A program made the translations under genes and the position numbers. A DNA stretch of 64,000 nucleotides from Klebsormidium nitens (lineage: Eukaryota; Plantae; Klebsormidiophyceae), in contig DF237422.1 in NCBI GenBank assembly GCA_000708835.1, positions 9,229 to 73,228 of the forward strand. The letters run 5' to 3'. This document shows, in pieces, positions 18,644-64,000 of this stretch. How positions within the stretch are numbered: the stretch's first letter is position 1; each line of letters begins with the position of its first letter. Below the pieces are notes generated by a model, which saw only the letters and a list, made by a program, of their open reading frames with translations, made no database searches and had not been told where the DNA came from.

Positions 18644-19399
18644 TGAAGTTGTCAACCCTGAGTTCGCGCCGTGATGATCTTAGTAATCTAGTAGCGTGTA
18701 AAGTTGCATGCGATTCGTACCGGAAGCCGGTTCTGGTGCCGTTGCATGTTTTCTACAAAGATAGACGTTCGAGTGGCTCGCAATTTGTACCATCCAAATA
18801 AGGTCATTGAAGTAGTAGACAAATCGGACGTATCACTGTATATCTTGAGACCGGAAGAGAGTGTGACAGGGGGGCCGGATCAGTCGGATGATGTGTTTGA
18901 ATTTTTTTGCTGCAGTGGTAGCTTGGTCTCGCCGGCGGCACCATCCCACGATCAGGGACTTTAGCAGATCAAGTCTGCTGAAAGCCTCAATGTTTGCAAG
19001 AGTTGCCTTGTGAAAGGCACCGGTGAGGCACCGGCCGTACGTACCCAGTTAACAAACATATGGTTGATATATTGGAATGTTTGGAGCTATACCATCACAA
19101 TATCGTCGCGCCGAGTGCAGAAAACCCAAGTCATTGACGAAGTTGAACGCGATGTATTTGTGCAACAATATTCGATGTTCTCTGATCATTGCATGAAGTT
19201 GAACGCCAGTGAAAATACTTACCAAGCGGCTGCCGCCGCGATACATACATAGGACTTTAAACTAGGATCGACTTTAAACGGTATATGTTGATATGTTAGC
19301 AGCTCTAGAAGCGGATCGAATATTCCAACAACAAGTGACCTCCGCGTGAGAATTGTCACTGCGTAAGTCGCATGGATAAAAGTGGACGGTCGCTCTGGA

Positions 19400-21645: not shown

Positions 21646-24600
21646 ATGGAGCTTCTGCAGCAGTACCTGGAAGCATCGCACCACTTTGTCTCAGCCCAAA
21701 GCGTGACTGTTCTGATCGGGCTTTTAACAATTCTGCTCTTCTCCGTCCGCATATTTGTTCCTACAAAGGCGGCCCGCGCGCTCCGCAAGGTTCCTGGGCC
21801 GCCTTCTTATCCTATTGTAGGAAACCTGGTTGAGCTCTTCAGCAAAGGGTATCATGAATGCCACAAGGAATGGTTGAGGACTTATGGCTCAATGTATAAG
21901 TATGTGATGGGGGACACGTTGCTGGTTGTGTCAGACCCTGATATTGTGCAGCAGGTGAGCACCGTCCTAAGGTCTCAATTTTGTTAGCGTCCGCGCCCGA
22001 GCTGCCTGTATGCTTTCATTATAATGCTGTCGTTGCGGGTCAAGATGAGGACTTGAGGCGACTACCCTTATTGCAAGATGATGGTTGGAAAAGAGATTTT
22101 GCAGAAAGGACAATGCAAAGCTTGCACAATTCTCAGGATAATGTCCTGTAGAACTGTACATGGCACTGGGGCTTTGGCAGGACAATTGTAGTGTGGCCTG
22201 ATGATCTCGTAAAACATTGGGTGGTACAATTTGCGGGTGAAACATTTCATGTGAGTCACCAGCTCCCCATTTATTGTCAGCTCTCAATCAAATTTCCAAG
22301 CAAGCAACAGCAGCCCTTCTGAGTACCTTGGCATGGTTGGGCTTCTCCAGAGAATAATCAGCGGGTATCATAGTTTTGCGCCATGGCTGGGGTATCGCAA
22401 GACGCGTTTCACCATCTTGCACTTTCGCACGATGTATTCAACATGTGTCTCAGTTTTGCAGAAGCTGGGTTTGCGTCAGGCAGTCCCACGCCCCTTTTCT
22501 TTTTTGTTGTCGTTATGTATCACAGCAGCACCAATGGCTCAGTTCTGTTTGAACAGCTTGTTTCCTGAATATCTCTTGAAAGGGGCAGTCTGGCCCAACC
22601 GAAAGTACGGCCCAATGCTGCCTTGGCGTGGGAGTTTCTCTGAGATCATTATTTCATGCAAGCACTTCCTTCGATCAATGACAACTTGCACCGCACAGAT
22701 AGTGCCTGAATAAAGACTTGTGGACCAAACGCTGCTGTTCGCGAGTCTGTGAAAAGCGCATGAAGCCGTCACTCAGTCTTGGTCCAGAACCATGTTTCAT
22801 GCAAGGCAAACTTCAATCCTAGAATCAGACACAAGCCCAGCATTGTGGTGTCTCAAAGAACCGACCTTATAACCACACATGAACTCCTGACATTCTTCAT
22901 ATACCCGGGAGGAAAGCCCATACTATCCTCTCACAAGAAAAGAGAGGCTCGGTTGAAACCCGACTGTCAATAAGAAATGTTCCCCCGCGGTAGAGATGAT
23001 GAAACTCAACTGCGGTTTAGGCTAAACCAAGCGCTTCGATTTCCCTTCACAGGTGGGGGTGCGGATGTTCAAGACGTTCCACGACCGGCCGATGCCAGGT
23101 TTTGTGGATGAGGAGCGTGCCGGGAAGGCGCTCGTCTTTAGCAAGTGAGAATCTTGCCCTTCTTTCCATTCTGCGATGCTCGTAGTTGAGATTCCTTCTG
23201 AAATAGAGCGTGTCTGCAGATGCTTCTCTCCACCACAGACATAGGTAGAAGCTTTTGCGATTCGGCCGCACCATGCATCTTCGGTTGTCCCACACTCACG
23301 CCGTATGTTGTTAAAGAAACCCTTATTTCTGAAAACCCAGGCTATCAAATCTGTCTTCCTTCTGCAAGGGCCAGTACAAAACGGGGCGTCTGCAAAGCAG
23401 TTGTGCTCCCCCTTCTTCATTCAGAAAGCTCAAACACTTTTAGCCTTATCAGGCACGCATGCTTGCCAGAATCAAAACGATGGAGCGTCACAATTCCAGT
23501 CGCCATATTGAGTTCAAACCACCTCCATATCCCATGTACCGAGGCCATACAGCATGGGCCTGCGCAACGCTGATCTCCCCATTTCCAGCACTTTGGCGGC
23601 ACCGAGGCATGCACTGCTCTTCCAAACTCGAAACGCTTGAAGCATCCAAATCAGAACCCCGAACCAAGCCAATCCATCTCCATGTCGGAATCTACAAAGC
23701 GCAGTACTGGACTGCCGTGCGGAATCGCTGTGCTCCCCCTTTTCCACACAACAAAACTCCAGCATTTGAGCCGTTCCAAATTACGCCCTACAGCAAAACA
23801 ACCCAATGCTTTTGAAACCCAGAATATAACATCTTTCTTCCGTCTACAGGTGCCAGTACTAGACTGGCGTGCGCACGGCGGCGTATCTTTTTCACACCGT
23901 AAAATCCAACATTTCGATGTTCATCAGCCATGCATGCCCCCCCAAATTAAATCGCCCCGAGCCAACCTATCTTTATTTCCCATCTACAGGGGGCCGATAC
24001 TGGACGGGCGTGCGCAATTCAGTGCTCCCCCTTTTGCACTCCGCGAAACTCCGGCACTTTGGCTGATGTCCTTGGTTCTCAATCTTTATACCACATAGTA
24101 TCATAACCGCATTTTGCCAAAGCCAAAACCATCATCCTATGTCCCACGCTTGCAGGGGCCAATACTGGACGGGCGTGCGCAACGCAGTGCTCCCCCTTTT
24201 TCACACCGCAAAGCTGCAGCACTTTGGCCGTACCATGCACGAATGCGCGGAGCAATTGGTGGCGCGACTCGAGAAAGCGGCTGCAAACGAGGAGCAAGTC
24301 AACTTGCTGGAGTGGGCGGGGGCGATGACCATGGACGTGTTGGGGTCTTCTGCCTTTGGGGTTACTTTCAACAGTCAGGTGAACACAGTCATTTGCACTG
24401 ATTCTTGAGAGCTTCTACAACGCTTTCGGGAAAGCAGCTGAAAACAAGGAGCTGATCAACATGCTGGAATGGGACTATGGACGTGTTGGGGTCTTCCGCC
24501 TTTGGGGTTACTTTCAACAGTCAGGTAGGTAATGGCCTGGGAATTTCCATCAGAGATCGGTGATCTTCTTTAAAGTTTTTGTCCTTGAATTTTGGGCTTC

Positions 24601-27600
24601 AAGAAAGCGGCTTCAATATGGAGCAGATCAACTTGCTGGACAGGGGAGATGACCATGGATCCGTGTCGGGTTTTCTTGCGGGTTTCGAGTCGCTTCCAAC
24701 TTTGTGGTGAGACTCTGGGATGTTCGCTTGGAGAGTCCATTTTGCGTCAGTGATTCGTCTCTCTTCTACACAACCGCGCCTCGAAAAGTCAATTGTAAGA
24801 GGAGAACAAGTCATGTAGAGTGGTCGGATAAATGCTCATGGACGTCTTGGGAATGCTTGCCTTCGGCATCAATCCCAGGTTCGATCGGCGTTGCAAAAAA
24901 CCGGAGTAAGAGGCGGCTTTTGATGTTACACTTCTTTCAGATTTCCTTGTTCATGCCAGGTACGACTTCTCGTGCTCAATCGTCTTCTCTACTGAGCTCC
25001 TCTCATTATTCCAGGTTCACCGAAAGACGGAAGGCCAAACCTGACGAAGTTCCTGAACCTAGTCTAAAAAAGCATGCCAAGTCGCGCTTGAGCTCTTTGT
25101 TCTCGTCACTGGTTGAATAAAATGTTCCGGATGAATTTGCTGTTAATTCAAGCGGCTTTTCAAAATTTCCAGTCACCTCAAGGTGGGCGAAGAGACGAAG
25201 GGCCCCAACCTTAAGCAATTGACTCGAGCAGCATCGCAGTTTCTGGATCGCTCAATCTTTCCAAATCCACTTCAGAACCTTGAATCCGAATACATACGCG
25301 CGGTTCTGATTCCCGGAGTTGCTAAGCCCCATCGTGTGCCATTCCATCTAGTAGGTCTTTTCTTTCCTCAGGTAAGAGAGGTTCCAGCCTAGCCGCGATA
25401 GCGTTCTCTTCTTTGCGGTCTTGGTTCCTTAGATGGAAGATCAGGAAGAAAAGCAAGACCCATATGCACGGTCTGAATGACATTCAATTCCCGGTTATGT
25501 CATCCGAAGATCAAACGCCCATCATGTCCTCTTCTAAGGCAGCCTAGGCACAATCACCCGCACTGAAACGTCCTTCGCTCCTCTTTGCGCAGGTCGGCGA
25601 AAAGACCGACGGCCTTACCCTGACAAAAGCCGTGAGCGAAAACCTCAACAACATCGCGAAATTGCGCATCAGTACTCTCCTGGCGATCCTCTTCCCTCCC
25701 CTCCGGAAGCCCGCGCAATGGATGATGTTACGGATCCCTGGGTCGGCCGATTACGTCCATAGGCAACGGACCGCGTATATACTGCGGGAGAGCCAGAAGA
25801 TCATCGAGGCGCGACGGAAAGTGAGAGAGTGTGTTCGGACTTTCGTCTTTGCATTCTGGTCATCTCATACGTCGATGTATGGCTTGGAGAATCTGCTTGG
25901 TTTCTATTGCTTCTTGGGAAGGCGGCTACTCTTAAGGCATCTCAGCAATCTGGATCTTTGGAACGTGGGGAACATATCTGGAGCGCACGAGATGAGAATC
26001 TATTCAAATCCTGTTACCTGTAACACGTTCAGATGTCCCTTGTTTTCCGCCAAGCTCTTAACCCGGAATTTGGTTAACGTTCCCGTGCAAGACGCAGACA
26101 CGTGGCGCCCCGTTGAGCATCCAAAGCAAATGTATCACTCCTGCGTACAGCCGAAAACTGTGACCCAGCCCCAGATCGGAAACATTGGCAGAGCTTGCTG
26201 ACGTGGCGGTTCCACAATCAATTGATGGCGCCCCGGGGTGGAAACGCGGACAGCAATTTTAACAAGAACTTTACACAGCCGACTCTCATCTTAGTAACGT
26301 CAGAAACTCGCAGTCGGGACATTTTAAAAAGAAACACGTTCTTGTAGGCAAGCGGACGTTCTTTGTGCGGCGAAACTTCTGAGCGCGCACGGCAACCGAC
26401 TCGCGTTTACCAGACTCCAGAGGCGCAACAGTGTGAACAGACCCTCAGACCAGGGTGTAAATAGGCCCCCTGTTTGAGGAAAAACGAGCCGTCAAGCCCA
26501 AGCCTCGAAGCACGTGTCTCGCTTCGTGACGTGCTGACGTCGTACTGCGTGCACGGGACGCCGTCACGAAGGCAGATGCATAAACTCGGTTACTCTACTT
26601 TAGGTTGCTGACGTCTCCTGTGCAGGAGGCTGACGTGGCGGCTTCTGAGGTTGCTGACGTGTCCCGTGCAGGAGGCTGACGTGGCAGAGACCCGGCACGA
26701 CTTCCTGAGCATGCTGACGCAAGCCCGGAACAAGACGACAGGGGAGCCGCTTTCGGACAAGGCGATCCTTGCGCTCGTGTTTGAATTCCTCAGCGCGGGG
26801 ACGGATACGACCGCAAATACGCTCAGTTTCGCCGGTGAGCCAATAGCCTATGAACTTTGCTGATAGCTTATTCGTTACTTCCGGTGAATAGACGGTTCGT
26901 ATCTAGGAGCGCTACTATGATTTGCACGTGGAAGAAAACGAGTTCCTCGGCGTGGGGACCGGATACGACCCCAAACACTTTCAGTTTCGACAATAAGCTA
27001 TAGCATACGAGATATTGTTGATACTTAATCTCTTACTTCCGATGACTAGACGCCTCAGATCCAGGAGCGCTATTTTCATTCTTATCTTTCTAAGGGGAAA
27101 CACTTGCGCTCGTGTACGAGTTCCTCGGCGCGGTAAGCTATCGCTTATGGGGTTTGCTGATCGCTTATCTCTTCCCCGCTCGTGTACCAGTCGTCGGCGC
27201 TGAGACTGATATGACCGCAAGCACAGTCAGCTTGCTGGTAAGCAATGGGGTTTGCTGATAGCTTGTTGCCGAATTTCCTTGAGTCGATGGTCCGACTGAA
27301 GAACTGCTCTCTGGTTTATGAAGTTTTTGAAGGAAGAGAGTGTGAGCGTTTCTTTACGAGTCCCTTGGCGCCAAAACGGACACAAATTCACACACAATCA
27401 GCTCCACCGGTAAGCTATCGCCTTCGCCCTAAGCTTTTTCGGATATGCGATTGTTCCTGCTATTTATTTCAGGAAAATGCAGCCGGAGCGTCACACAAGT
27501 TAGTGATAGTTGAAACGCTCTAGGCGCAAGAACGGGTACAGTCGCAAACCGCAACGCAACCAGCATCACCGAAAGATGGAACCGAGTGCCGATTTTTGAG

Positions 27601-30234
27601 TAACCGGGTACCGGATACCAAGACTCCCCACAGAGCGGCTTGCATCAAGGGTCTGAATATTCTCTTCGCTTTAAAGTACACCCCCGAAACAACACCGTTC
27701 CTTTTGTGCATTGTAGTCATTGGCGAAGAGCCCAGCCCCCGAGAAAAACCTTTGCGAATCGCAACAAAGATGCGAAAGTCTGGCGACCAATCAGCTGTTG
27801 CCAGGTGTCTGGTCTCTGTCCCTCTCTAAATCCCTAAAGGGACGGCGCTGGCCTTATGAATCTGCGCAGTCTACTCTTTGGCTATAAGTTGGTGACAAGC
27901 TGTCCCGCGTTGTCCGGGGTTTCACGTGAATTCACGAGAGAAAAGGAATGACCAACCCCAAGTCCAAATGCCAAACACGAACTGCCACGTGTCTGGATCG
28001 CGGCCTCGATTCTCTATCCAAGCAAACAGTTCCGCCCTTGTTATTCCTGGCAGTGTTCTGTTTGACCAACAACCCGGCCGCCGAGCAAAAGATGTGCCGC
28101 GAGATCCGCGAGTTTTACGAGAAGCTCGAGAAGGAAGGAGTGGCGGATAGCGAGTTCCGCCCGACGTACGACGAACTCGCCCAGTTTCCGTACGTCGAGC
28201 AGGTAAATGATTGGTCTTTCCCAACTTTCTTTGAATGCCTCGTTCAGGCAAGCTTCTGCGAGAGCTCTTTTTCGGAGCCGTCTTCAGCCTTGACGCTTTC
28301 CCAAAGGACGTGGTCATATTCGTAGCGATTCTCAGTCACGTATACACCACAAAGCCTGCGCGTGTCGCTTGAGAGCCGCGTCGGGGGAAGCCCACTTTTA
28401 ACGTCAGAGATACTGGCAAATCAAGTGTGACTGAAGCGGCGTATGACTTAAGATTCATGTACCCCGACCAAACAAACTAAAAACCCTAACCTGAACAATC
28501 ACGCGCGCGGCACCCCAAGCCACCCTAACCACCAGACTAACCCCACCCGTCCCCCGGGTGCCTTTCTTAAGTCACGCGGCTTTTGAGTCACACTTACGTT
28601 ACCAGAGTTCCTCAGAGTTGTGAGTTGACCTACTCCAACTTTATCCATACAGGTTGTCCAGGAGACGTTACGGCTCTTCCCCACGGGAGCCGTCATTTCG
28701 CGGCAGGCCTCCCAGGATTGCCACGTGGCGGGCATCCACCTACCCAAGGGCGTCAATGTACGGTCACCCTTGGACCTCCCTTACTGTTTCTTTGTGCTTT
28801 CCTCCCTTTCTTCTCCTCATCGGTCCACTCGTCCCGAGCGTTGCTGAAAAGTGCGACATGAAAGGAACACGGAATCCATTCCCGCGCACCTCGTAGCCTT
28901 CCAGAACAGAATGTACACTTGTACGTACTGGTTGAGAACTGAGTGTGGGCAGAAAAGTACATACAAAAACTATGCAGCTGGGGACTTCTGTTTGTCGGTG
29001 GTCGCACTTTTCGAGAGACGTACTGACCCTGCGTTGCCCGATGCAATTGCTTATCATGTATTACCGGCCAACGATCTTGTCTCGGGACAAGAGCCGAGTC
29101 AATTTCCGGTTCTGTCCACGGGTTCCGGACAGCGGCTTGTAGTCCTCACGTGCCGGAATCGATCTGTTACAAAGCGTCGACGACTATGACAGGAGATCCA
29201 ACTCTTTGGAGCATTGAATCGGGTCCGCAGTCGTGCCTGGCTCAGAATTCTGGTCCGGTTAAATTGCTGGTTCCGTTTCGCAGGTCTTGATTCCGGTCTA
29301 CGCCATGCACCACAACCCGGAAGTTTGTCCCGACCCAGACGCGTTCCGCCCGGAGCGCTTCGATCCGGCGGAAGTCGCAGGAAGGCACCCGTACGCCTTC
29401 ATCCCGTTCGGGTGAGCGCTGCGTCATATGCTCTTGGCCGTCAAGACTGGAAAAGGGATCCTTTGTGAGAACCCTTGAGCGCTTCCTCGCTCTGTTATTC
29501 TCCTGGTTAGTGCCATTCTGGCTAGCTGATCTTGGGTACTCTTGCTGCGTGTCAGTTCCTATTCTAACTACTGAGGATCTTTCTTGGTCGCAAAAGATTA
29601 AAGGAAGGGCTTTCCCTTGTTTGGAAAGGGCTGTGATCCAAGATGGCGAATTTTGCGGAGGTCTTGCATGCACCCGTGCAAGTGGTTATCCTTCTTGACC
29701 TAGTAACTCATCCGCTGTTCGCATAGCGTAAGTTTCTTTTCTCAGTACTCTTCTCCTTCATTCAACCCCAAAGTGTGCTTATTATCGCAATGAACGCGCA
29801 ACGCTTTACAAGCACAATCTCCTTCCCACTCCAAATGTCATGCCCTTTTTCCGGGGCGTCTATCTGAGAATCGTTTTCCCCTTTCAGCTTTGCTCCGAGT
29901 TGCGCTTCAGCGACCGCTATGGAAGAAGCAAAGCTGGCAGCCATCCTGCTTTCTTCTCGCCTAGCCCTTTTGCATGACCCCCTCGCTCCAAAGCTCCATC
30001 AGAGTTTAAACGCTTTCGTTCATCGCTTATAGGCTCGGTCCACGAATGTGCATTGGGCACCGCTTCGCGATGGAGGAAGCAAAGCTCGCGCTCATTCGGC
30101 TTTACAAGAGACTCACCTTTACGGTAATTAACGAGAAAATCTTGCGGCCCGACGGAAAGTTAGATCTTCAAGTAGGGATTGTGCTGAAACCAAGGAACGG
30201 CATGTGGGTTGTGCCGCAAGTACAGAGTAAGTGA
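21646..30234 (+). CDS. Cytochrome P450 paralogue B (CYP711-clan-like), 9 exons, apparently intact
   Basis: Same exon structure as paralogue A: ~21646-21954, ~23053-23144, ~24156-24378, ~25593-25820, 26672-26834 ([13 protein letters not shown]), ~28054-28202, ~28653-28758 (ETLR), ~29284-29411 (PERF), ~30033-30234 (LGPRMCIG). Confidence 0.93.
23355..24065 (+). repeat. Exon-echo array of P450-B exon 3 acceptor and 5' end, ~5 copies
   Basis: Variants of ...acag|GGGCC(A/G)xTACTGGACGGGCGTGCGCAA...GTGCTCCCCCTT near 23362, 23535, 23695, 23845 and 23985 precede the real exon at ~24156. The period is ~150 bp. Confidence 0.85.
28411..28609 (+). mobile_element. MITE-like family 1, copy 4 (P450-B intron 6)
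   Basis: Shared core at 28470-28560. Left arm tactggcaaatcaagtgtgactgaagcggcgtatgacttaaga is an imperfect inverse of right arm tcttaagtcacgcggcttttgagtcacacttacgttaccag. Confidence 0.7.
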
Positions 30235-31995
30235 AGCTGCCGCCCTCGGGTTGCGCCGTTATACTCTTTGAATCATAGTAGGGTGTATATTGAGGACATC
30301 TGCGGTCGTTCGAGAACCGGGTGCTATGCATGTATTGTACCAAGATAGATAGACCAGTTGCTCGAGATTTGTACCATCCTTTGAATCCAGATGGGACCAA
30401 TGGACTGGCAGACAGTCGGACGTATTTGTTCTTGAATTCTTCTTGAGAAGTGAAAGAGGCTGTGACATGGTCGGCCGCATCGGAATGATGCTTTCCGGGC
30501 CGATTGAGATATCTTGCTACAGCAGTATTTAGGCATGCGTGCAAAATTGTGAACATACGTACATGGCGCGGCCTTGCCGGCGGCCCCAGCCCCCAATTCC
30601 AAGAAGGGGTTGTCAGCACAATTGCCAGAAGTTGCGGATGGCAAATTGGCATATTTGGAGCATGCGTACCATTTACACCGGCACATCTACCGTAGCCAGA
30701 GGAAATCCCATTCCCGGCCCGGAAGAGCGACAAAGTCTAATGGTACATCCAACCAGTACGGTACTGATACCGTTTCAGCCATGTAATGCTGGTAGATAAA
30801 AGTCAGAGCTAGCTCCTGCATGTGGGGCTGCCGGCGCCGGCCTGTCATAGATATGTAGGATCGACTATACGGGGCCCAGGTTGTTGATAGCAATTATTAA
30901 AGCGCGGGCGGCAAAATCCATTATACACCGCGACAATTGCATGTCGAATGGTATGATGCAGGAATTGATACTGGACTCATGGTGCGCCACGTGGCAACAT
31001 AACCTAGGGTACCGTACGTCTCTCTGACCACATCTGACATATCACCAAGGGTAAGGTCATGTTGAAGCTGACCCCCTATGTTCAGTTCAGAGGGTGGGGG
31101 GTTGGGGGTTTGGAATAGTAAGGGCAGCGAAAGGGGGGGGGGGCTTGGCCGTTCGGGTCTCGAGGGGCTCTGGACTGAACATTTAGGGGGGTCACTACAA
31201 AATGACCTTACCCTAAGTCTCAATCCAGCTGGCGCCGCCGGGTCGCATAGAAGATACGGCGGCCACTGATGTGTGCCAGCCACATCTGTATGATCCCGGC
31301 TAGATCGATCATTGTATATAGCACCCGCCAACCACTGCATGCAGGCCATGCAGAGAAACACTAGCTGCAATGTCGAACTGTGGAACTCTTCCGGCCTGCC
31401 AAAATCATTGGATGACACTGACAGAAACGTATGTCAGGATCGGACTCATCGCATGCCAATACTATTCCATTCCAATTCCATTTCAGTGACTCATTGATAA
31501 TGATTGACTTAAAGTAGTAACTTAACAACTCATCTCACGAGCCACAGTCTTCCCGGCATGAAACGCATGCAAGCCCCTGATTGAGACGAGAAGGATCACA
31601 TGCAACTCTATGTTTGCAACCATCGCCACGGCGGTCAAAAGTGGGAGCCGGAGCCCAGCTATGGCAAGATGCAGAGCCGCAGCACTTTCAAGTTTCTAAG
31701 CCCTATGATTAGCAACGCATAGTTTCTGCAAAGGCAGCGCATATCAGATTCCTACTTTTGAGTCGAGAGTTGCTCGAACAGTCGTACACCTCTTCCAAAA
31801 TCAGCAACCGAACAAATGACGTGATTAGTCTCTTCGGATTAGCGAATTTGACGTTGACCAGAGCGGCCAGCTGGATGTCGGGCCCTTCCGGTCCATCTTG
31901 CTATCAACAGCTTATTGCTACAGAATCTAAACATCAACTCTAGGATGTATTAACAACAAATGGCGAAAGCGCGTGCATTGGTCGGGACGATCCGG

Positions 31996-53590: not shown

Positions 53591-55998
53591 TAGGGCTTCT
53601 GTTGCTCAAACCCCGCGTTCGCGCCGTTCTCAGGAGATTTTGTATTCGGAGTTTTAAGCAGGAAACGAGAGATTAGATTGCGGAACTCAGCTGTTGAGAA
53701 AGCAGCTAGTGCCTCATGGCTATCGGAAGGCAAGACTGGACGGGTAGAATCGGTCGAAAGGTGGGGCGGGGCAGGGTGCTACTGATCGAAAGATCGACGA
53801 TACTGTTCTCTGGGGGTGTGTGTAAACAGGGGGTCAGGTGGCTTGTGATAGATCCGGAGTTTTAGTCGAATACGATAGCGCGCCAGGATGAGGCAGGGTC
53901 TGAACACAGGAATGAGTTCGAGACGGTTTACACGTTCAGCTGGTTTAGGGGCCTTGGCTTGAGTTTTGTAGGCACCAAAAATGAAAGGCATTTGCTTAAT
54001 GGTTGCGAGTTTATTGACAGTTTGAAACCGTTCTGCTACTTGGTGCGTCGAACCTCAAATGTCTAACTCTCTTGTTGAGTTCTTGGAGACGAGCTTACAC
54101 ACCAATCGACCGTCACGATATGCTATAGGATTGAAAGTCCACGCCCATATATATCGCTCGCGCAGGCTTCCGAAAACGGTACTGGATAAAGATGGACAAG
54201 CTGCTTACGGTTATTCAGTGGTCGAACTTTGCGTCACGCGCCTTTTCATGATTTGAAAAGTCCCACCGGCCAGCTTTGCATTGGGCTACAACAGGCGGCT
54301 GGTTGGTCCTCCCAGCTGGGACCCGTCAGAATCCTTGCCCCTGATCGCTCCCTCAATCGAGAGTGTACGTTGAGTACTTGTTTTCCTCCTCAGTCAGCTG
54401 CTAGGCAATCATATGCATAGCTAAGTATTCCAATTCCTTTCTGTCCTTTTAACTATGACAACCGACATTGAACTTCAAGGACTGTTCTCAGGTTGTCTGC
54501 AACGTTCATCATGCTCCAAACCGGATCACAGCAATGCTTAGGAAAGTTGCAACTTCGATATTCAAGGGTCGAAGCCGTCCTCTCCAGGCTTTTTGGCATG
54601 GACGAATTATACAGTTTGTTCCAAGCTGTAGCGGTGGTGAGCCGATCATATGGTCAGCTCACGGTGGAAAGATCAGAGATTCGGGAGTCCCGGCTCCTGT
54701 GTGTCGAGACGTCGACGTTATACTCATCATTGTCATCATATGTTGGAGGCATTACCTAAATCAATCATTGCACGTCGTTAATTGGTCCTACGATTCTCTG
54801 TGATTGCGGCTGGATGGCCGCCTCGATGGCCGAGCCTCCGAGTCTCCGAACCAGTGATTACATGCGCCTCTTCAGAATACGGGCAGAATTCTTTCATATA
54901 TAAAATCAGAGACGTTGCGAGCTAGGCTTTGGATTCTTCCGAGCTGAGCTAAGCTGGGCGGAAGCTTGGGCAGCCTAAGCCTTACCTAGTAGCTAGCCTG
55001 CCAGCCTGCCTGCAGGCCCCGGCGGCCTGCAAAGGGATAGCTAGAGGTCATCGTTGGTGGTATTGTTGCACGATATCGTATCTAACAGTGGGCATTCCCA
55101 ACTTGACCAGCTCGACAGTCTGGCGCTTTGCTGCAAGGGCGCTTTTCAGCTCGGCTAGCTCATAGGGGGAATGCCCCACAGATCTTGAGGCACCCACGCA
55201 CCTACCGCAGCTCCAGGTATGTTGTCCTGCCTTATGGCAGCTCGCCTCCCCGTTGTTTGGCTCGCGGCTGCTTTCTTGCGCGTTTTGGCAGGTTTTCGCG
55301 GCTTTCTTTGTACCAACTTTACGCTGGCTACAAGCAAGCTGACTGACCCACCCTGCCAGGATGACTGCCATAAGAAAACAAACCGACTGCCAAGCCATTC
55401 AACTGAGAGCTCTTGTATAGAACATACCTGTCTTGCATTGCGTGTCGTTGTGGTAATTGTCCTTAGGGTTGTGTTGCTTCTCATTTTGCTGTTTTTAAGT
55501 CTTCATGTAATTGCATCCCTACCACTCTCTCGCCTACTGGCAGTACAAGCTGAAACCCTCTGCCAATTGTCTGCTTCTTTCCAAAACAACACCTTGCTTA
55601 CCCATTTCCATGATTCTCTACAATCATCCAGCTCCACACTCTCTGTAAACCCTTCAGGCCTTCTTAAAACCGGAATAGGCACACTCTTTGTTCCAATCTC
55701 TATCTACCCCGTCTCCGTCCTCGTAACTCCCACCTCCTTCTCTTGCTTCGCAACGTGCAAGAAAATTAGGGTTCCACATCAAATTGATCAGGCTAATGTT
55801 TCTGTGCCCCACCTTTTAGCTAGCAATGCTTGCACTGCCACCAGTTTCCACATGGGTCTCAAGTTTCAAACATTGTTCAAGCTCGTACTCACTTTTCCCA
55901 TCTTGCCCAACTTTCTCTTGACCCTTCCTTCTTTCCCTCCTTGCAACTTCATTGAACCCTGCGCCAATCTTCTTTTCACCCAGGTTCCTCCAGCCAGC

Positions 55999-58850
55999 AT
56001 GGCTACGCCTCTCAAACCCTGGGCTTCCCCTGCGGCGCTGACAACACTGTCTCGCCGCACAGATAACCCTTTCCTGACGGGCACGCATGCTACCAACTCC
56101 ATTGCCACCTTCACCGCTGCTTGCACAAGCGGGAAGCTTGGCCCAGCACTGGTGCCTAACCTTTCGACCACAGCAGCTGAACATGGCGGCGTCATGCAGG
56201 GCGACCACTCGCTCGCACTGAAGCCAGGCCAGCGCATTCGTGCCATTCGCTTCCATCATCTCGAGTCCCCGCTGCTTTCCTCTGACGATACCACCGACCC
56301 CCCCTACCCCGTCCGCTACTGCGCAGTTGAAATTGCTGGCGTTCATTCTAACGTCAAGCTAGCTGCACAGACAGGCGTTCGCACATCTGTTACTGTGGTC
56401 GGCGCAGACGGGTCGGAGCAGCCAGTTACCACTAAGCCGTCTCAGCCAATGATCGTCTTTGCGCCTCTCGCCTCTGCCGTTGAGCTAGTGGACGGTCCAC
56501 TTCAGCTCCAGGAGTTTTGCACCCAGCACCCTGCTCGTCCAGCTCTTCCTGTTTCTCAGCCCCAGAGGCCCAGTAGCCGCCTCCCTCATGTTTACGACTC
56601 CGCCCTTGCGGACATGCACGTCGTCTGGCTCTTTAACCCCCCTTCTCAGGCTGACGTTGAGGAGACGTGCCGCGCTCTCGAGATTCTGGGGTCTATCAAG
56701 GCCATTAACACCATGGCAGCAGACTCTGGCAAGCCGTACCAGGAGCTCTACTTTCGCTCTGCTGACAGTGCCCACAAGGGGCTCGCTGCACTTGATGAGG
56801 TCTACGACGTGAGTTCTCTCCCCTTCCTGCCTTTCTCAAGCCACTCTTTGTATTATTCGGTTTCATTGCGCTGTGCTTTAAATGTGGCATTGAAAGCCCC
56901 CCTTTCTCTACTCCTCTCTGGCTGTTCACCGTATGCCCCACCGTTGCCTCCCTCTCGTTCCTTGACGCCCTGGTGCACATCTCACTCTCTAAAAGTATGC
57001 ATCAAACAGAGCTTCTGCTCCCCTCCCCTCTGCCATGATCAGTGCCCTTTCGAAACTTCACCTCTCTTCCTTCAACCCCAGGCCCCAACTAGTCTGGCAC
57101 ATGTCTCTCTCTTTCTCTTAACTTCGTCAGGTGACAACGAGCTTTCACATTTTTGCTTACTATCCTGCCACTTATGCTCTGGAAAGCACATCATCAACGA
57201 GCATCAACGGTGGCAAAGACAAATAGGACACCACCCTCACACCACTGCTTTCTCTTGTCCGTTCACTGATATCTCCTTCTTCTTTGCTCCCTTTCAGGTC
57301 TGCCCCGCGCAGTACATCGCCAGCGAGAAGCACCCCCTGCAGCAAAGAGTCAATATCCCTAACGGGACCGTCGGCCCCACTGGCTTCAAGACCGTGAAGG
57401 AGCTTGTTACGGCCCTCACCTCCGCTGTGACTGCACGCGCGCCAGGTGCTACCGTTAAACCGCTGCGCGAGGACAGCGACTCGTCGAGCAACACGCCTTG
57501 AGCACAAGCTGATCGTCCACGTCCAGGTACCTCGCATCCTCCCCTCTGCAAGCTTATTAAGTCACTACCTCAGGTCTTCTCTCTTCAAGGCAACCGTCCC
57601 TGTTTTTCTTGCCTTCCAAGCTTCTGACTATGCTGCGTTTTCCTGGTTCAGCGGCAGCTTTCCGGATTTTTCGGTGCAGCGCTGCCCAGGGCTGTTTTTG
57701 CAGCTCTATAGGCTTCCCTGTCCAGGAAATTGTTTTACCGGGTTTTCCATTGTTTCCTGTCCGTTTCCCTCTCTCTCTTCGGCACAGAACCTCTACGCTT
57801 GCTCGTCCCTAACGCCGCACGAGCTTCGTACCTACTTACCACTTTCTCTCACCTATCTGCAGGCGTTTATGCAGTGGTCGTCGCTGATTCTCGATCCTAT
57901 CACGATTACTGCACCTGAGAATGAAGCTTCCAGCTTCACCCTCACCATCAAGGGCCTGCCGCTCTTTGATCGCATTGGCTCGCTCGTCATCTTGCCCCCC
58001 GCGGCATTCCACGTCGAGGACACCAAGCAGGTAGGTCTTTCCCCCACCCTTCTGCGAGCGCCCGCCCCTAGCTTGAAACACCTGCTCCCCCCTTCCTGTG
58101 CACCTTTTTGCCTCAATTCTGCATCCATGATTCTTGCCTCACCTCACCTTGCGTCCACTCTGAAACTAAAATCAGGCCTTACCTTCTCACGATTAGCCCC
58201 TCCACTTTTCTCACTGTTTCCTCGTTGCTCACTGCCTTCCCTCCTTCTGCAGCTGGAGGAGAGCCTCGAAGAAGCCCGCAAACGTTACTCCATTCCCATC
58301 CGCGCCGGCGCTCCCGAGAACCGGGCAGTGGAGATCCTCAACGGCCGCAACCGCGTCCACTGTTACTACGTGTCAGGCGATCAAGCGGTGCTTCTCAGCA
58401 TCGCCCAGTCGCCGGGCCTCATTGTGGGGACACAGATCTGCCGTGCTCAGCTGGCCTTCGAGTACAACACCTGCCAGGTCAAGCGCAATTTGACTGCACC
58501 CCAAAAGCAAGCCGGGCTTCTGAGCCAATGGCTTGCGCCTGCGCACATCGCTCAAGTTGACGCGCATAACTCCCGCAAGCGCCCCGCCCCGTCGGCCCCC
58601 GTCGTCACTCTTGCCGAAGAGGTCGGGGACTCGATGCAGCAGGTACAATCCTTCCCTGCTGTTGCACCGCCTTTGGACCTTTCTCGTGTCTCTCCAATCA
58701 CCGGGCCTAGATTCTGTTCTTGCACTTGTCGAATTTCTGAGTTTCCTGATGCTTATTGCCTTTCAAATCACTCCCTGCATCTTATTTGCACCACCTCCCA
58801 TCGGTTCCATTCCTTAACTCAACGATCCCTTGTGCGTGTTGCAGGACTAG
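55999..58850 (+). CDS. LINE ORF1-like protein (predicted spliced form, ~530 aa, RRM-like segments; one frameshift in this copy)
   Basis: GC3-rich exon-like blocks 55999-56808, 57298-57526, 57863-58030, 58253-58642 and 58845-58850 (GAC TAG) are separated by C/T-rich GT-AG segments. VWLFNPPSQADVEETCRALEILGSIKAIN...YQELYFRSADSAHKGLAAL resembles an RRM fold by eye. The 57298-57526 block is 229 nt (3n+1). Confidence 0.65.
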
Positions 58851-59953
58851 ATGCAGCGCACATTGGCCCTCTTCCAGAACTAGTGGGGCCTGCAAGCTCG
58901 CTGCTTGCTCCTGGATTCTCTTGTCGAACATTGTATCCCTCAAAACCGAAGCACTCTCCCACTGCACTATTACAAGCTGGCATCCAACTTGCAGAACTCT
59001 ATCAAAATAGCCTTTTGCTAACTCGGCTTTTATACCATCGGCAGATCTTTGGGCGCCTTGCTTTCACTCTCATTCGCGTAGACGTCCAGTCGCATTTGCT
59101 TGTAGCGCGACCTTCTATCTGCATGTCGGTTTTACTTACGAGCCTTATATCATTACCCATCATGTTTTACCACCTGGCTTTAATACTACGCCTACGACCA
59201 GGCTCCGCACTGTTTAACAACCTCCTTGCCGAATATAGTTCACGATCCTCATGCCGCCAGTCTCGCCATGCGCGCTCTGTTAAATCTCGTATGCGCCGCT
59301 ACATGCGTCTACAAATTACTTACCGTCACCGCATACTACTCTGTTGTATCATGCTCTATCTTAGCATATCCAAAGTGCACTCACTGGGCCCACACGGATT
59401 TTCTCACACCTCCCTCGTCCAACCAAATAACGTGCGCCGACGAAAATGCTTCTCGAAGAGATGGCAGCCTCCCCGCTACCTTGTGCACCTTGCACACAAT
59501 ATTGACAATATGCTCAGCAGTTATTCCACAGCCCTTGCCCATAATGCTGACTCACTTCATCCTGAGCACTGGCATGCCTCTTTATGGTTAGTGGGCTGGC
59601 CCACAGTCGCTCTACACCTTGAATTAATTTCTTTTGCACCTCCATGCTTATGCTTACTTCCGGCTCTCGGTCTCATGTACCTTCTGCCATTCCTAGCTGT
59701 TAGCTTCTACAGTGCGTTCCTTTCTCGTCCTCTTCGACACTGTCTTGACTCCACATGGTCGGTATGCAGCCGCCTGCACACTTTTATCATATACCACCTA
59801 ATAACTTATACCTGGTATTTGCACCATCTCTCCTGCAAGTTGCTGCGCCTTCATATATTATTTGTCCATTCACAAACTCTGGCTACCCGTTGGCTCACTC
59901 TGCTTGCAACCTGCTTACTGTTCCTTGCATCTCTTCTTTTGCTGCGCGCAGGC

Positions 59954-59977
59954 GATATTGAGCCCAATCCCGGGCCG
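59954..59977 (+). other. 2A-like (StopGo/ribosomal skipping) peptide motif DIEPNPGP
   Basis: LLLLRAGDIEPNPGP matches the D(V/I)ExNPGP consensus, in frame and ~40 codons before the APE start (HLNILNWN). Confidence 0.85.
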
Positions 59978-61122
59978 TTGCCTACCGGTGCCACGATGAC
60001 TTCTATTGAACACCCGCCTCATCCCACTCCCAATAACGCAGCACAAGGTTCCACCACTGACATTCCCCCTCCTCATCAGTCGGGCCATTTGAACATCCTA
60101 AACTGGAACTGCCAAGGTATTAACTCCAAGCTTGCACACCTACCAGCTTTACTTAAACAACACGATGTCCATCTAGCGGTACTTACCGAAACACAGCGCA
60201 CAATTGGGGTCGAACGAAGCAAGCAGAGTCACACATCGGATGGTTATACTTTTCATTTTTCATCGTACACGGATGCCTCACACACTTCGTTCTTTCTACC
60301 AGTCCGTTCACGGGAGTGGGGCGTTTGTATTGCCGTACGCACTGGTCTCGCCTATCAGTCAGTGGCTTTGGACAACACAGTTTTCAAAGCTCGGGTCCTT
60401 CATGGCATTCTTAGTATTCCGACCCGCACTTCCGGAATCCTCACTCTTGATCTCTTAGGGGTAGACCTATGCTCCCGCACGTGATGATCTAAGACATGCG
60501 TTTTGGTCCAACTTTACAAGCTATGTGACCACTTTGGCCCCGGTCATTCATGCCGATACCAACCGACATCTTCTTCTGGTTGGTGACTGGAATAGTTGTG
60601 TTGATATAGAGCGCGACATCTACCGCTCTGACCCTCCAAACACTGACGCAGCTCCGCGTAACCACTATTTAAAACGCTTCTTGCAGCGAATGAACCTCAC
60701 CGGTATGCCGCTTTTCGACCCTATGGCATTCGACAAACTGACGGCTGTTCACGACTTTACATTTTCGACACACAGCTGCCGCTACCGATCTATTTTAGAC
60801 AAGATATTCACAAGTTTTCCGGCAGGGCACTGTGATCGCTCTGAGGTTCTCACTTGGGAACGTCAAAAGGGGGTCCCTTATTCCGATCACCGTCCAGTCG
60901 TTACAAAAGTGAATCTCACCACCCTTTGCAACGGTTGGATTGAATATCCTTTGCACCCAGTGCAACGGCCCCGTGTCAAAATCGACCCTTCACGGATTAC
61001 TGTTGAGCAGATGAACGAGCTGAAGCTTCAAATTGCCACCTGGAAAACGAAGCTGCCCACATCTGTTCGACAAGTTCTCTTTACCCCCAATCTGGTCTAC
61101 CCAAGTACATCTCAAACTCTTG

Positions 61123-61360
61123 NNNNNNNNNNNNNNNNNNNNNNNNNNNNNNNNNNNNNNNNNNNNNNNNNNNNNNNNNNNNNNNNNNNNNNNNNNNNNN
61201 NNNNNNNNNNNNNNNNNNNNNNNNNNNNNNNNNNNNNNNNNNNNNNNNNNNNNNNNNNNNNNNNNNNNNNNNNNNNNNNNNNNNNNNNNNNNNNNNNNNN
61301 NNNNNNNNNNNNNNNNNNNNNNNNNNNNNNNNNNNNNNNNNNNNNNNNNNNNNNNNNNNN
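61123..61360. other. Assembly gap (238 N) inside LINE ORF2
   Basis: Run of n characters between the APE and RT regions. Confidence 0.99.
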
Positions 61361-64000
61361 CCAGTGGCATGCACACATGACAGCTGTCCAGGAGTCACAT
61401 CTTCACTGGAAACGGCAGTATGACTCCGAATTGCTCACAGCTAAACGTGAACGAACTAAAAAACACCAAGAGACGGTCTTTAGCACCCCTATCAACTCAA
61501 AAGCCCGCCGCAATTATCACTTACCCCACAAATATTCTCAACAACCTTTACCTGCAGTAATGAAATCCCCCACCGACCCTACTCAATTAATTACCGGTCA
61601 GTCCGTAAACGAGACATGGGGCTCGTCTGCTACTGCAACGCGCCCCAACACCATGCCGGCGGTCTCGACCGAAGCTGGGACTCCACCTTGGCTTCACGCC
61701 AACCTTTGGACCAATGCTCATTCACAGATTTCTCCGCTGCAAGACCAGCTTATGGCTCCTATTCAAGCTGGCGAGTTGCGTAGCTTTCTTTCTAATACCG
61801 GCGCTTCTTCTCCAGGCTTGGATAAGATTCAATACGATGTCCTACGTTTCATGCTTTTCCGTCCCGAATTTGCTGATCTTCAGCTTTCCCAGATGCTCTT
61901 GCGCTTCCTCAATCTCCTGCTTCATATTCAACACATGCCTACCACAATGAAAACGGCCCTTCTCACCTTCATACACAAAGCTGGAGATCCCCTTCACTTT
62001 TCAAACTACCGCGGCATCAGTTTACTCAGTTGTTTGTTCAAAATAACTTCACTGGCACCCTCAACGGCCGTCTTCAAAACATCTTGCATTCCCAGGATGG
62101 TTTCGATTGCAACCAAGGGGCTAATCGCAAGGGCGTCCATGCAGCACATAAAGCAACAGTGCTCATGAACATTATTGCGGATGCACGCCTTCATAAAAAA
62201 CCCCTCCACATCATTTACACAGATATCAAGGGTGCATTCCCAAGTGTACCCTATCAGGCCTTCTCCGATGCTCTCACTACTCTTGGCCTCTCTGGTTCGT
62301 TTTTGCACCTAATCAAAGATACTCAAACCGACTTCACCGTCACCGCAAGAGGCCCCACAGGATATTCCACCCCCCGTCCAAAACACAACGGCGTTCATGA
62401 AGGCGATTGTTTGAGCCCAACCTTATTTTGTCTTGTCTTGAACATGTTTTTTGTATGGCTGAAGTCACATAATCTAGGTTACTCAATGCAGACTAGGCCC
62501 CTGCACGAGTTGGCAGACTTAGCCCCCAATCCTCGCATTCCTGTTAATGGATATGCTGACGATATGGCTCTTATTGGTAATAATAATGCTGAGGTAACAA
62601 CCACTTTGCAAATGCTCGAGCGCTTTCTTTCCTATTACGGCATGGCACTAAACCCAGCCAAGTGCGGCTATCAATATCGATTGGACCGTTTTGCCAGCCG
62701 TCCTGATCCCCCCTCCACACGATGGGGCCGAATACCTGTATTCCATGGCAAAACGTCTTACAAATATCTGGGCTACTATGTTAACACCCAGCTGGATTTC
62801 ACCTACCAACATCAAATGATGGCGGAAAACCTTCAACAAGCTTGTCTGGATTTTTATAGCACACGCTCTATGAGCCTTACCGAAGCAATCACGTACGTCA
62901 ACTCGGATCTAGTCTCCAAGCTTCGTTATCGAATGTACTTGATTAGCTTTCCCAAAACGTACCTGAAAAAATTTGAAACATCGCTTGCCGGAACAGTCAA
63001 ACGACTTGCTCGCCTTGCAAGTTCGACACCTACCGACTTGCTAATCAACCAAGGTCTTCAAAACGTGTATCTTCTGCAAGCTATCACACGAGCTGATTAC
63101 CTTCAGGCAGCTCTTCAGGCTCCTGACATGGCATGTCGCCTTACCTCGCAGCTTAGTTACAATGCACTCTGTGATCTTCCTGTTCTACAAGGACGTCCAC
63201 CATTTTCTCCAGCAGGTCTACCGATTGGTTGGAAGGAATCTCGATTTTCTCCACTCCTACGCGGGGTTCGTGATCATCTTGTCTCCACGAATTGCTCACT
63301 TTTCATCAATTTCGACAAGTCAGTACAACTTGCTAGTCGAAAATATGCACACTCTCCTTCCGCTAGCGTACTCAGAGTTGTCAAATCTTCTTCACTGCCA
63401 CCTTACTCGTATCCACATTGTTCGTCTGTTTCAGAATCTTCACAACGCTGGGCTTACAGAGTTAGCCGATCTTTCGCCCCTTTTTTGAACATCCAATTGC
63501 TACTCCCGAATCCGAAAATTGGACCCTACAAAAGGGTCGACTCTCCAAAACATTTGCACAAACTGCCGCGAGCACTACCCGGGTTTTGCATGCTGATCTT
63601 CATATTCCAAATTGCAGCGCTGCTCAACTTCGTCTTCTCCGACTTCTTCTCCGACTTCTTCTGGAACGCCTGCTCGCACCATACTCGGACGGAATGCCTC
63701 CTTTACATGCTGCCCCTGCGGAAACGGCTTCACATTGGGGCACGCTACCGAAATACACCAGCCTCGCCACATCAATATACACAGACGGCAGTGCCATGCG
63801 CAATGATACACGGGCTGGCTTTGGTTTTTAGTACTTTCCGGATTTGCCAGATGCCGATCCTCATGCACGCGTACGGCTTCGTATCCCTGGCCATCAAACA
63901 ATTGCCCGCGCAGAGGCTTTTGGCGTTCTTGCTGCCGTCTTACATTGCGCACGCCCCACCAATATCACCATCTACTGTGACCGCCTTCCTTTGATCCAAC

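What the first reader, a model, noticed from the sequence alone, without database searches (positions are those of the whole stretch)
55217..60484. LINE with open, in-frame introns: candidate splice-controlled switch between ORF1p and an ORF1-2A-ORF2 read-through polyprotein
Seen: the ORF1 region has GC3-rich exon-like blocks separated by C/T-rich GT-AG segments with branch-like ctcac/ttcac motifs. These are 55217-55983, 56809-57297 (489 nt), 57527-57862 (336 nt), 58031-58252 (222 nt) and 58643-58844 (202 nt). The three internal introns are all 3n and stop-free. The ATG of the 760-aa ORF (55219) sits inside the first donor (cag|gtATGt), so only unspliced RNA has it. Splicing the last intron gives CAG|GAC TAG and ends ORF1, whereas retaining it keeps the frame open to the 2A motif and APE. 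About 1040 intron/linker codons are stop-free. The single frame break (~57490) falls in an exon and damages both forms, as decay would. Inference: spliced RNA makes compact ORF1p, and only unspliced RNA makes RT, released by 2A. With LINE cis-preference, RT would copy the intron-containing RNA, explaining how a retroelement keeps introns. Intron-retaining retroelements are known (Penelope-like elements), but I do not know this read-through design. Caveat: C/T-rich sequence is naturally poor in stops.
Basis: partly seen in the sequence, partly recalled or inferred. Interest (0 to 1): 0.92.

Follow-up and report, generated by a model that had tools for sequence, protein, structure and literature searches.

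The report
Algal LINE with translatable introns
A jumping gene (LINE) of the alga Klebsormidium carries real introns that selection keeps free of stop codons and in frame, so unspliced RNA can be read as one long protein up to its copying enzyme while spliced RNA yields only the small first protein; this could explain how a retroelement keeps its introns.

Summary
The window is Klebsormidium nitens. It holds a decayed APE-type LINE: a conserved ATG, an ORF1-like gene of four exons, a hydrophobic leader, a 2A motif, APE and RT.

- **Open introns.** In the window, the five GT-AG segments and the linker have 0 in-frame stops, against 36 and 37 in the other two frames. Dinucleotide shuffles of the introns give about 1e-8.
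- **Other copies.** Copies from two more lineages keep every internal splice site. Their ORF1 exons are about 80% and about 50% identical, and their introns cannot be aligned. Across five copies the introns hold 2 in-frame stops against 126 off-frame.
- **Lengths.** Twelve of 13 distinct lengths of introns 2-4 are multiples of three.
- **Intron 5.** It is always 3n+1, and splicing it ends ORF1 within one or two codons. RNA contigs from two runs of one study show this junction.
- **New context.** A relative without the ORF1 block shows that the block sits inside the pre-2A leader ORF.

Not supported: the start-codon-in-donor idea is not universal, because one lineage has AT there. No RNA evidence covers introns 1-4 or the retained form. 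The splice switch is therefore well supported by comparison but only partly shown.

The scan had noted leader-2A LINEs elsewhere in this genome, but not the open introns.

The parts
55093..55218 (+). Probable 5' UTR of the LINE. Similarity to other copies begins at about 55093.
   Evidence: Alignment with L002, L003, L005 and L001. blastn similarity to L002 starts at 55214.
55219..55221 (+). Conserved ATG that opens the long frame (context CAG-TATGTT).
   Evidence: ATG invariant in five copies. The preceding GT is AT in L003 and L005.
55217..55983 (+). 'Intron 1', also the N-terminal leader segment. It has 255 stop-free codons. The first ~78 codons are conserved.
   Evidence: 0 in-frame stops against 10 and 13 off-frame. 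Homologous to the N-termini of L002 and L001. Differences by codon position are 20/21/21, which points to nucleotide-level constraint. An RNA contig covers 55889-56110 without a splice.
55999..56808 (+). ORF1-like exon 1, starting at a conserved Met.
   Evidence: P0002 (KFL_004730080) is 100% identical. dN/dS against L002 is 0.09.
56809..57297 (+). Intron 2: 489 nt, phase 0, stop-free.
   Evidence: Lengths in other copies are 378, 636, 570 and 642, all 3n.
57298..57526 (+). Exon 2, with this copy's frame break at about 57497-57502.
57527..57862 (+). Intron 3: 336 nt, phase 0, stop-free.
   Evidence: Other copies: 276, 171, 144, 144.
57863..58030 (+). Exon 3.
   Evidence: dN/dS 0.10 against L002.
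58031..58252 (+). Intron 4: 222 nt, phase 0, stop-free.
   Evidence: Other copies: 237, 198, 198, and 194 in one decayed copy.
58253..58642 (+). Exon 4.
   Evidence: dN/dS 0.08 against L002.
58643..58844 (+). Intron 5: 202 nt (3n+1), stop-free in the retained frame. This is the frame switch.
   Evidence: A spliced contig in run X8 joins 58638 to 58841 (GT..AG). A loose end in run X10 reads into exon 5. Length is 202 in L002 and 205 in L004 and L006.
58845..58850 (+). GAC TAG: the end of ORF1 in the spliced form.
   Evidence: L002 has GAT TAG and subfamily B has ATC AAC TGA.
58845..59923 (+). C-terminal part of the leader protein, hydrophobic, read in the frame of retained intron 5.
   Evidence: Aligns with leader residues 201-530 of P0001. 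Codon-position differences against L002 are 36/27/58. 0 in-frame stops against 13 and 11 off-frame.
59924..59977 (+). 2A / StopGo motif (...LLLLRAGDIEPNPGP).
   Evidence: Translation. The motif is kept in L001 (twice), L004, L005 and L006.
59978..61400 (+). APE endonuclease region, with a frame break between 60484 and 60525.
   Evidence: Pfam Exo_endo_phos, weak at 17.6 bits. 48-54% identical to the APE of L001 and L006.
62030..64000 (+). Reverse transcriptase. The element runs off the end of the window. A frame break lies near 62030-62168.
   Evidence: Pfam RVT_1, 74 bits. 59% identical to L001 RT.

Best explanation
This is a decayed copy of a Klebsormidium-restricted APE-type LINE whose whole sense strand is kept as one reading frame.

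**Layout.** The frame runs from a conserved ATG about 125 nt inside the element, through an ORF1-like gene of four exons, a hydrophobic leader and a 2A StopGo site, into APE-RT. In relatives it continues into RNase H, a zinc finger and OTU.

**Introns.** The ORF1 block has genuine GT-AG introns. Selection holds introns 2-4 at phase 0, 3n length and stop-free, so they behave like exitrons. Intron 5 is 3n+1.

**Two RNAs (inferred).**
- Spliced RNA ends ORF1 one or two codons after the last junction and makes only the compact ORF1 protein.
- Unspliced RNA is read straight through introns and leader to 2A, which releases APE-RT.

**Why the introns persist (inferred).** Only intron-containing RNA can make the enzyme. 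If LINE enzymes prefer the RNA that encoded them, that RNA is the one copied, so the introns persist.

**Shown:** frame conservation, 3n indels, conserved splice sites, and splicing of intron 5.
**Inferred:** read-through translation, 2A activity, cis-preference, and use of intron 1.
For: - **Window statistics.** 0 in-frame stops against 36 and 37 off-frame. Shuffles give about 1e-8.
- **Independent copies.**
  - L002: ORF1 exons at dS above 1 and dN/dS 0.08-0.10, with introns that blastn cannot align. It keeps one frame from the ATG to position 4266, apart from one 1-nt shift.
  - Subfamily B (L003-L006): about 50% ORF1 identity, the same layout and frame, and only private breaks.
- **Pooled counts.** 2 in-frame against 126 off-frame stops in 2251 intron codons. 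Twelve of 13 distinct lengths of introns 2-4 are 3n.
- **Splice sites.** 18 of 20 internal donors are GT and 20 of 20 acceptors are CAG. They sit where conservation drops.
- **Intron 5.** Always 3n+1, with a stop 1-2 codons after the junction. The junction is present in RNA contigs from two runs.
- **Leader.** The C-terminal part is coding and conserved as far as L001. In the window and L002 the conserved motif ELYQNSLL lies upstream of the first in-frame Met.
- **Linkage.** The ORF1 block is always linked to the LINE and is flanked by both halves of the leader seen in ORF1-less L001.
Against: - No RNA contig covers introns 2-4, and none shows retained intron 5.
- The two spliced contigs come from one study. 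A processed DNA copy lacking intron 5 cannot be excluded.
- A fast-evolving coding linker would also be stop-free and change by 3n. Only the splice-site evidence makes these segments introns.
- The intron 1 donor GT is missing in subfamily B, and one RNA contig is unspliced at its acceptor.
- In subfamily B and L001 a Met precedes the conserved leader motif, so internal initiation is possible there.
- 2A activity and cis-preference are untested.
- Every copy seen is broken somewhere.
Confidence: 0.6

Rival explanations
1. There is one giant polyprotein, and the 'introns' are essentially coding linkers. The element is normally translated unspliced, the C/T-rich segments are disordered spacers between ORF1 domains, and the splicing seen at intron 5 is incidental host processing of the kind known for human L1.
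For: Stop-free sequence and 3n indels are exactly what a coding linker shows. The only RNA evidence for splicing concerns one intron in one study. The region before ORF1 is coding in the ORF1-less relative L001.
Against: Splice-site consensus and CAG acceptors with pyrimidine tracts are kept at all four internal introns in three lineages, although the interiors are unalignable. A stop lies right after the intron 5 junction in every lineage. The segments lack any codon periodicity. A Met is conserved just after an acceptor-like CAG at the start of ORF1.
Confidence: 0.17
2. The introns are kept open to protect the RNA, not to make ORF2. Open introns stop nonsense-mediated decay of the unspliced template RNA. 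APE-RT is made from either RNA by reinitiation or internal initiation in the leader.
For: In subfamily B and L001 a Met lies just before the conserved leader motif. LINE ORF2 reinitiation is established for human L1 (general knowledge).
Against: In the window and L002 the conserved leader motif lies upstream of the first in-frame Met. The retained intron 5 frame matches the leader frame in all lineages. Once the frame is open, ribosomes reach 2A anyway.
Confidence: 0.15
3. A host gene merely lies next to a LINE insertion, and the open frames come from chance or composition.
For: The block is annotated as an ordinary hypothetical gene, KFL_004730080. Its GC3 (0.61-0.76) is higher than that of APE and RT. 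C/T-rich DNA is poor in stops.
Against: Off-frame controls and shuffles exclude chance. The block occupies the same place and frame upstream of 2A-APE-RT in at least five contigs from three lineages. It is flanked by both halves of the LINE leader. A search of 1.84 billion representative proteins found only 11 relatives; every one whose locus was fetched is LINE-linked, and none carries a source name other than this locus's own hypothetical-protein annotation.
Confidence: 0.02

Closest known systems
2A-bearing APE-type LINEs: L1Tc/ingi of trypanosomes, and CR1, Crack, L2 and Rex1 elements of animals (Odon et al. 2013, PMC3708506; Luke et al. 2013, PMC3894237)
   Same: A D(V/I)ExNPGP StopGo motif sits in the N-terminal region just before APE. 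It is thought to set how much ORF2 protein is made.
   Different: In those elements 2A correlates with absence of ORF1 (abstract of PMC3894237). Here an ORF1-like gene with introns sits inside a leader of roughly 600 codons ahead of 2A. The host is a streptophyte alga.
Exitrons (Marquez et al. 2015, PMC4484396)
   Same: GT-AG introns inside coding sequence that are 3n and stop-free, so that retention keeps the protein frame.
   Different: Exitrons have exon-like composition and occur in host genes. Here the segments are intron-like in composition, lie in a retrotransposon, and the last one (3n+1) acts as a frame switch.
Penelope-like elements, which retain introns (Arkhipova et al. 2003; Craig et al. 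2021, PMC8557442)
   Same: Retroelements that keep spliceosomal introns through retrotransposition.
   Different: PLEs use a GIY-YIG nuclease and a telomerase-like RT. Their introns lie mostly in the 5' UTR, and their retention is ascribed to an unusual copying mechanism. Here it is an APE LINE with introns in the coding region held open.
Retroviral splicing and Gag to Gag-Pol ratio control; the spliced intron of Ogre LTR retrotransposons
   Same: Unspliced RNA is both the genome and the mRNA for the polymerase. Alternative processing sets the ratio of structural protein to enzyme.
   Different: These are LTR elements and viruses. The ratio is set by frameshift or read-through, or splicing removes rather than gates the upstream gene.
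L001-type relative (Logan SRR23617307): a single ORF of leader, 2A, 2A, APE, RT, RNase H, zinc finger and OTU
   Same: The same start context and N-terminal motif, the same C-terminal leader, 2A, and APE/RT 47-59% identical.
   Different: It has no ORF1 block and no introns in the leader. RT identities form a trichotomy (54-59%), so gain versus loss of the block is unresolved.

Membership tests
APE-type non-LTR retrotransposon (LINE) | Reverse transcriptase domain of the non-LTR type | tested here: met
   Pfam RVT_1 at 74 bits against a cut-off of 29.6, at 62030-63991.
APE-type non-LTR retrotransposon (LINE) | APE (Exo_endo_phos) endonuclease upstream of RT on the same strand | tested here: met
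   Below cut-off in the broken window copy (17.6 bits). Above cut-off in the relative P0001 (28.9 against 24.5). The order APE then RT holds in all loci.
APE-type non-LTR retrotransposon (LINE) | Multiple dispersed copies, some 5'-truncated | tested here: met
   Related copies lie on contigs L002-L010. L004 is 5'-truncated within ORF1 exon 1.
APE-type non-LTR retrotransposon (LINE) | 3' tail and target-site duplication | not testable with these tools
   The element runs off the window at 64000.
2A-bearing LINEs (Odon/Luke 2013) | D(V/I)ExNPGP motif N-terminal to APE | tested here: met
   DIEPNPGP at 59954-59977. The motif is conserved in L001, L004, L005 and L006.
2A-bearing LINEs (Odon/Luke 2013) | Single ORF, no ORF1 | tested here: not met
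   An ORF1-like four-exon block under purifying selection lies upstream of 2A.
2A-bearing LINEs (Odon/Luke 2013) | Demonstrated ribosome skipping | not testable with these tools
   Needs an in vitro translation reporter.
Exitron | GT-AG intron within coding sequence, 3n long, no in-frame stop | tested here: met
   Introns 2-4 in five copies.
Exitron | Both spliced and retained isoforms observed | tested here: inconclusive
   Only the spliced form of intron 5 was seen. There was no coverage of introns 2-4.
Exitron | Exon-like composition | tested here: not met
   No codon periodicity. The segments are C/T-rich like introns.
L1-type ORF1p (RRM-containing) | RRM fold | tested here: inconclusive
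   No Pfam hit. AlphaFold2 gave mean pLDDT 43, with a beta-alpha-beta-beta-alpha stretch at residues 207-269. Atlas feature hits lean to RRM families but score 0.86 or less.
Penelope-like elements | GIY-YIG endonuclease | tested here: not met
   The endonuclease is of the APE type.

The most novel reading that the evidence does not exclude
A lineage of LINEs has made spliceosomal introns part of its expression strategy. Translatable, exitron-like introns and a terminal frame-switch intron let one RNA species make only ORF1 protein. The intron-containing RNA alone makes the 2A-released APE-RT. That both sets the ORF1:ORF2 ratio and ensures that only intron-bearing RNA is copied. The pre-2A leader may also be a general landing pad for cargo: L008 carries a different, non-homologous block in the same open frame.
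Probability: 0.5. Interest if true: 0.88.

Novelty: new variant of a known kind. Interest (0 to 1): 0.8.

Why it matters
LINEs are expected to lose introns, because they copy themselves through RNA. Retention of introns is regarded as a peculiarity of Penelope-like elements, and its cause there is unknown (PMC8557442).

Here the sequence comparison gives a testable reason. Introns survive because the enzyme can only be translated from RNA that still holds them. The price is that every intron must stay readable.

This would be a new way for a LINE to set the ratio of ORF1 protein to ORF2 protein, a long-standing question in the field (PMC3894237). It would also be a natural case of selection acting on intron sequence solely to avoid stops and frame shifts. 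Finally, it shows that a gene annotated as an ordinary hypothetical protein (KFL_004730080) is part of a transposon.

Tried and rejected
- **ORF1 family.** Pfam on the two long ORFs and on P0002 found no family.
- **ORF1 structure.** AlphaFold2 with a 14-row alignment gave mean pLDDT 43, too poor for a fold search, so none was run. ESM Atlas gave only weak leads to RRM families.
- **Second copy in the window.** The repeat finder found none.
- **Reads.** Read laying (one call allowed) returned few contigs and none over introns 2-4. It neither supports nor refutes their splicing.
- **LINE clade.** The RT search found about 11 close unnamed relatives, then generic LINE RTs at 30% identity or less. 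No clade could be named.
- **Gain or loss of the ORF1 block.** RT identities of 54-59% form a trichotomy, so this stays unresolved.
- **L008 cargo.** BLASTP of P0002 against the L008 upstream ORF showed no similarity.
- **Precedent.** Searches for LINEs with coding-region introns or with OTU domains found nothing in the held library.
- **Chance and neighbouring host gene.** Both were considered and rejected.
- **Intron alignments.** Forced amino-acid alignment of introns between copies is not interpretable.
Full report
**What is there**

The window is from Klebsormidium nitens. Exon 1 is 100% identical to the annotated hypothetical protein KFL_004730080 (P0002).

- Five GT..AG segments lie at 55217-55983, 56809-57297 (489 nt), 57527-57862 (336), 58031-58252 (222) and 58643-58844 (202).
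- They separate exon-like blocks.
- After the last one the spliced reading is CAG|GAC TAG.
- The unspliced reading stays open through a 365-codon 'linker' to DIEPNPGP at 59954-59977.
- It then enters an APE domain. RT follows at 62030-63991 (Pfam RVT_1, 74 bits).
- The element runs off the window end.
- This copy is decayed. Frame breaks lie at about 57497-57502 in exon 2, between 60484 and 60525, and near 62030-62168.

**Is it more than chance?**

Yes.
- In the read frame, the five segments plus the linker have 0 stops. The other two frames of the same DNA have 36 and 37.
- Dinucleotide-preserving shuffles of the five introns give stop-free fractions of 0.0006, 0.012, 0.047, 0.18 and 0.17. 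Their product is about 1e-8.
- Exons have strong codon periodicity and high GC3. The introns have none.
- The introns therefore look non-coding, apart from the absence of stops.

**Comparative test**

Protein searches found very few relatives. There were 11 in 1.84 billion representative proteins, and those whose DNA was fetched are all linked to the same LINE.

*L002, an ENA metagenome contig.*
- It has the same layout.
- Its ORF1 exons are 76-84% identical to the window's.
- Synonymous divergence is above 1 and dN/dS is 0.08-0.10.
- blastn cannot align the introns.
- Every splice site is in place.
- Its introns 2-4 are 378, 276 and 237 nt, all 3n. Intron 5 is again 202 nt, and the spliced form reads GAT TAG.
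- One frame runs from the ATG to position 4266, apart from a single 1-nt shift.

*Subfamily B (L003-L007, JGI metagenomes).*
- ORF1 identity to the window is about 50%. The layout and frame are the same.
- Intron 2 is 636, 570 and 642 nt in three copies.
- Intron 3 is 171, 144 and 144 nt.
- Intron 4 is 198, 198 and 194 nt. The 194 is private to L004.
- Intron 5 is 205 nt (3n+1), and the spliced form reads ATC AAC TGA.
- The breaks are private to single copies. Where one copy is broken, another is intact.

*Pooled over five copies.*
- The introns have 2 in-frame stops against 126 in the two off-frames, in 2251 codons.
- Twelve of 13 distinct lengths of introns 2-4 are multiples of three.
- The distance from the leader ATG to the ORF1 ATG is 780, 771 and 903 nt in three copies, all 3n. 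It is 922 nt in a fourth copy that carries a frameshift.

**Are they introns?**

- Eighteen of 20 internal donors are GT and 20 of 20 acceptors are CAG after a pyrimidine tract.
- These sites coincide with the points where exon conservation ends.
- A contig from RNA-labelled run X8 joins 58638 to 58841, skipping exactly the 202 nt with GT..AG ends.
- A contig from run X10 ends at the donor and continues with the first letters of the next exon.
- Both runs belong to one study and their RNA label is a guess. A processed DNA copy cannot be fully excluded.
- No contig covered introns 2-4.
- A run X17 contig covers 55889-56110 without a splice at the 'intron 1' acceptor.

**New context**

- *A relative without the ORF1 block.* L001 (Logan) is a single ORF: leader, two 2A motifs, APE, RT, weak RNase H, zinc finger and OTU. 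It has no ORF1 block.
- *Shared N-terminus.* Its start context (ccaggtATGt) and N-terminal motif (WLAAALLRVVGCFRG) match window 55210-55310.
- *Shared C-terminal leader.* Its leader residues 201-530 align with the window's 'linker'.
- *What this means for the window.* The ORF1 block with its introns sits inside the pre-2A leader ORF. The 'linker' is the C-terminal half of a conserved, hydrophobic leader protein. Codon-position differences against L002 are 36/27/58.
- *Translation of the leader must start upstream.* In the window and L002 the conserved leader motif ELYQNSLL lies upstream of the first in-frame Met. Through retained intron 5 is the simplest route.
- *Gain or loss.* RT identities among the window, L001 and subfamily B are 54-59%, so whether the block was gained or lost is open.

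**What does not hold**

- The GT that overlaps the start codon is AT in subfamily B. That subfamily has a donor-like CCC|GTGAGG about 38 nt upstream instead.
- The first 78 codons are conserved evenly across codon positions (20/21/21). This suggests a nucleotide-level signal, such as an internal promoter, rather than a selected peptide.
- An acceptor-like CAG 12-15 nt before the conserved ORF1 Met is kept in four of five copies. A 5' intron that uncovers the ORF1 start therefore remains plausible but unshown.

**Mechanism**

The best-supported reading is a splice-gated LINE.
- Spliced RNA makes ORF1 protein only.
- Unspliced RNA is read through the open introns and the leader to 2A, which releases APE-RT.
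- Because that RNA is also the template, the introns persist.

*Shown:* selection for one open frame, 3n indels, conserved splice sites, the frame-switch geometry of intron 5, and its splicing.
*Inferred:* translation through the introns, 2A activity, cis-preference, and use of intron 1.

*Main rivals.* The segments may be mostly unspliced coding linkers. Or the openness may protect the RNA from decay while ORF2 starts internally. Chance and a neighbouring host gene are excluded.

**Comparison with what is known**

- 2A in LINEs is known, but it is reported to go with absence of ORF1 (PMC3894237; PMC3708506).
- Intron retention is described as highly unusual among retroelements and typical of Penelope-like elements (PMC8557442).
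- Stop-free 3n introns are known in host genes as exitrons (PMC4484396).
- My searches of the held library found no LINE with coding-region introns held open.
- I rate this a new variant of a known kind.
- The scan had noted leader-2A-APE LINEs elsewhere in this genome (s1-326899, s1-267625), but not the open introns.

**Limits**

- The nature of the ORF1 protein is unresolved. It has no Pfam hit, its AlphaFold2 model is low-confidence, and the RRM leads are weak.
- The LINE clade is not named.
Copies were only compared.

Noticed in passing
window 60617-60726: High-depth RNA contigs (depth 36-123) from three runs in three studies match this part of the APE region exactly. At 60617 they join 255 nt of unrelated sequence. 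This may be a 5'-truncated copy inside a highly expressed gene, or an exapted fragment.
   Followed up: no
window 55025-55201: One contig from run X10 skips 55026-55200 with CT..AC ends, which is a GT-AG intron on the minus strand. It suggests an antisense transcript running out of the LINE 5' end across its boundary at about 55093.
   Followed up: no
L008:1459-8310: A related LINE has a frame of about 2284 codons with a single stop. Blocks with codon periodicity alternate with open blocks that lack it. The region upstream of its leader-2A-APE has no similarity to P0002, so it may be different cargo under the same open-frame rule.
   Followed up: partly
L001:1750-1930: The ORF1-less relative has two 2A-like motifs about 45 residues apart (GDIERNPGP and GDIHPNPGP). 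A C-terminal OTU protease domain scores 30.5 bits, above the Pfam cut-off.
   Followed up: partly
window 55984-58642: The ORF1 exons have GC3 of 0.61-0.76, against 0.46-0.58 in the element's leader, APE and RT. This hints that the ORF1 block has a different origin (perhaps a captured gene) or is under stronger translational selection.
   Followed up: partly
L004:1-125: A 5'-truncated LINE copy starts within ORF1 exon 1. It directly abuts an open reading frame (…FLGHMVNPIGLKPQEVKVAAIMRIP) that I did not identify; it may be a fragment of another retroelement.
   Followed up: no
window 55171-55188: A short upstream ORF (ATG plus four codons, then TGA) lies in the putative 5' UTR. It is not conserved in L002.
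   Followed up: partly
window 11000-18700 and 21700-30300: Many repeat pairs lie about 11.4 kb apart at 72-90% identity, which suggests a tandemly duplicated gene region. A 147-nt tandem array lies at 15357-16052.
   Followed up: no
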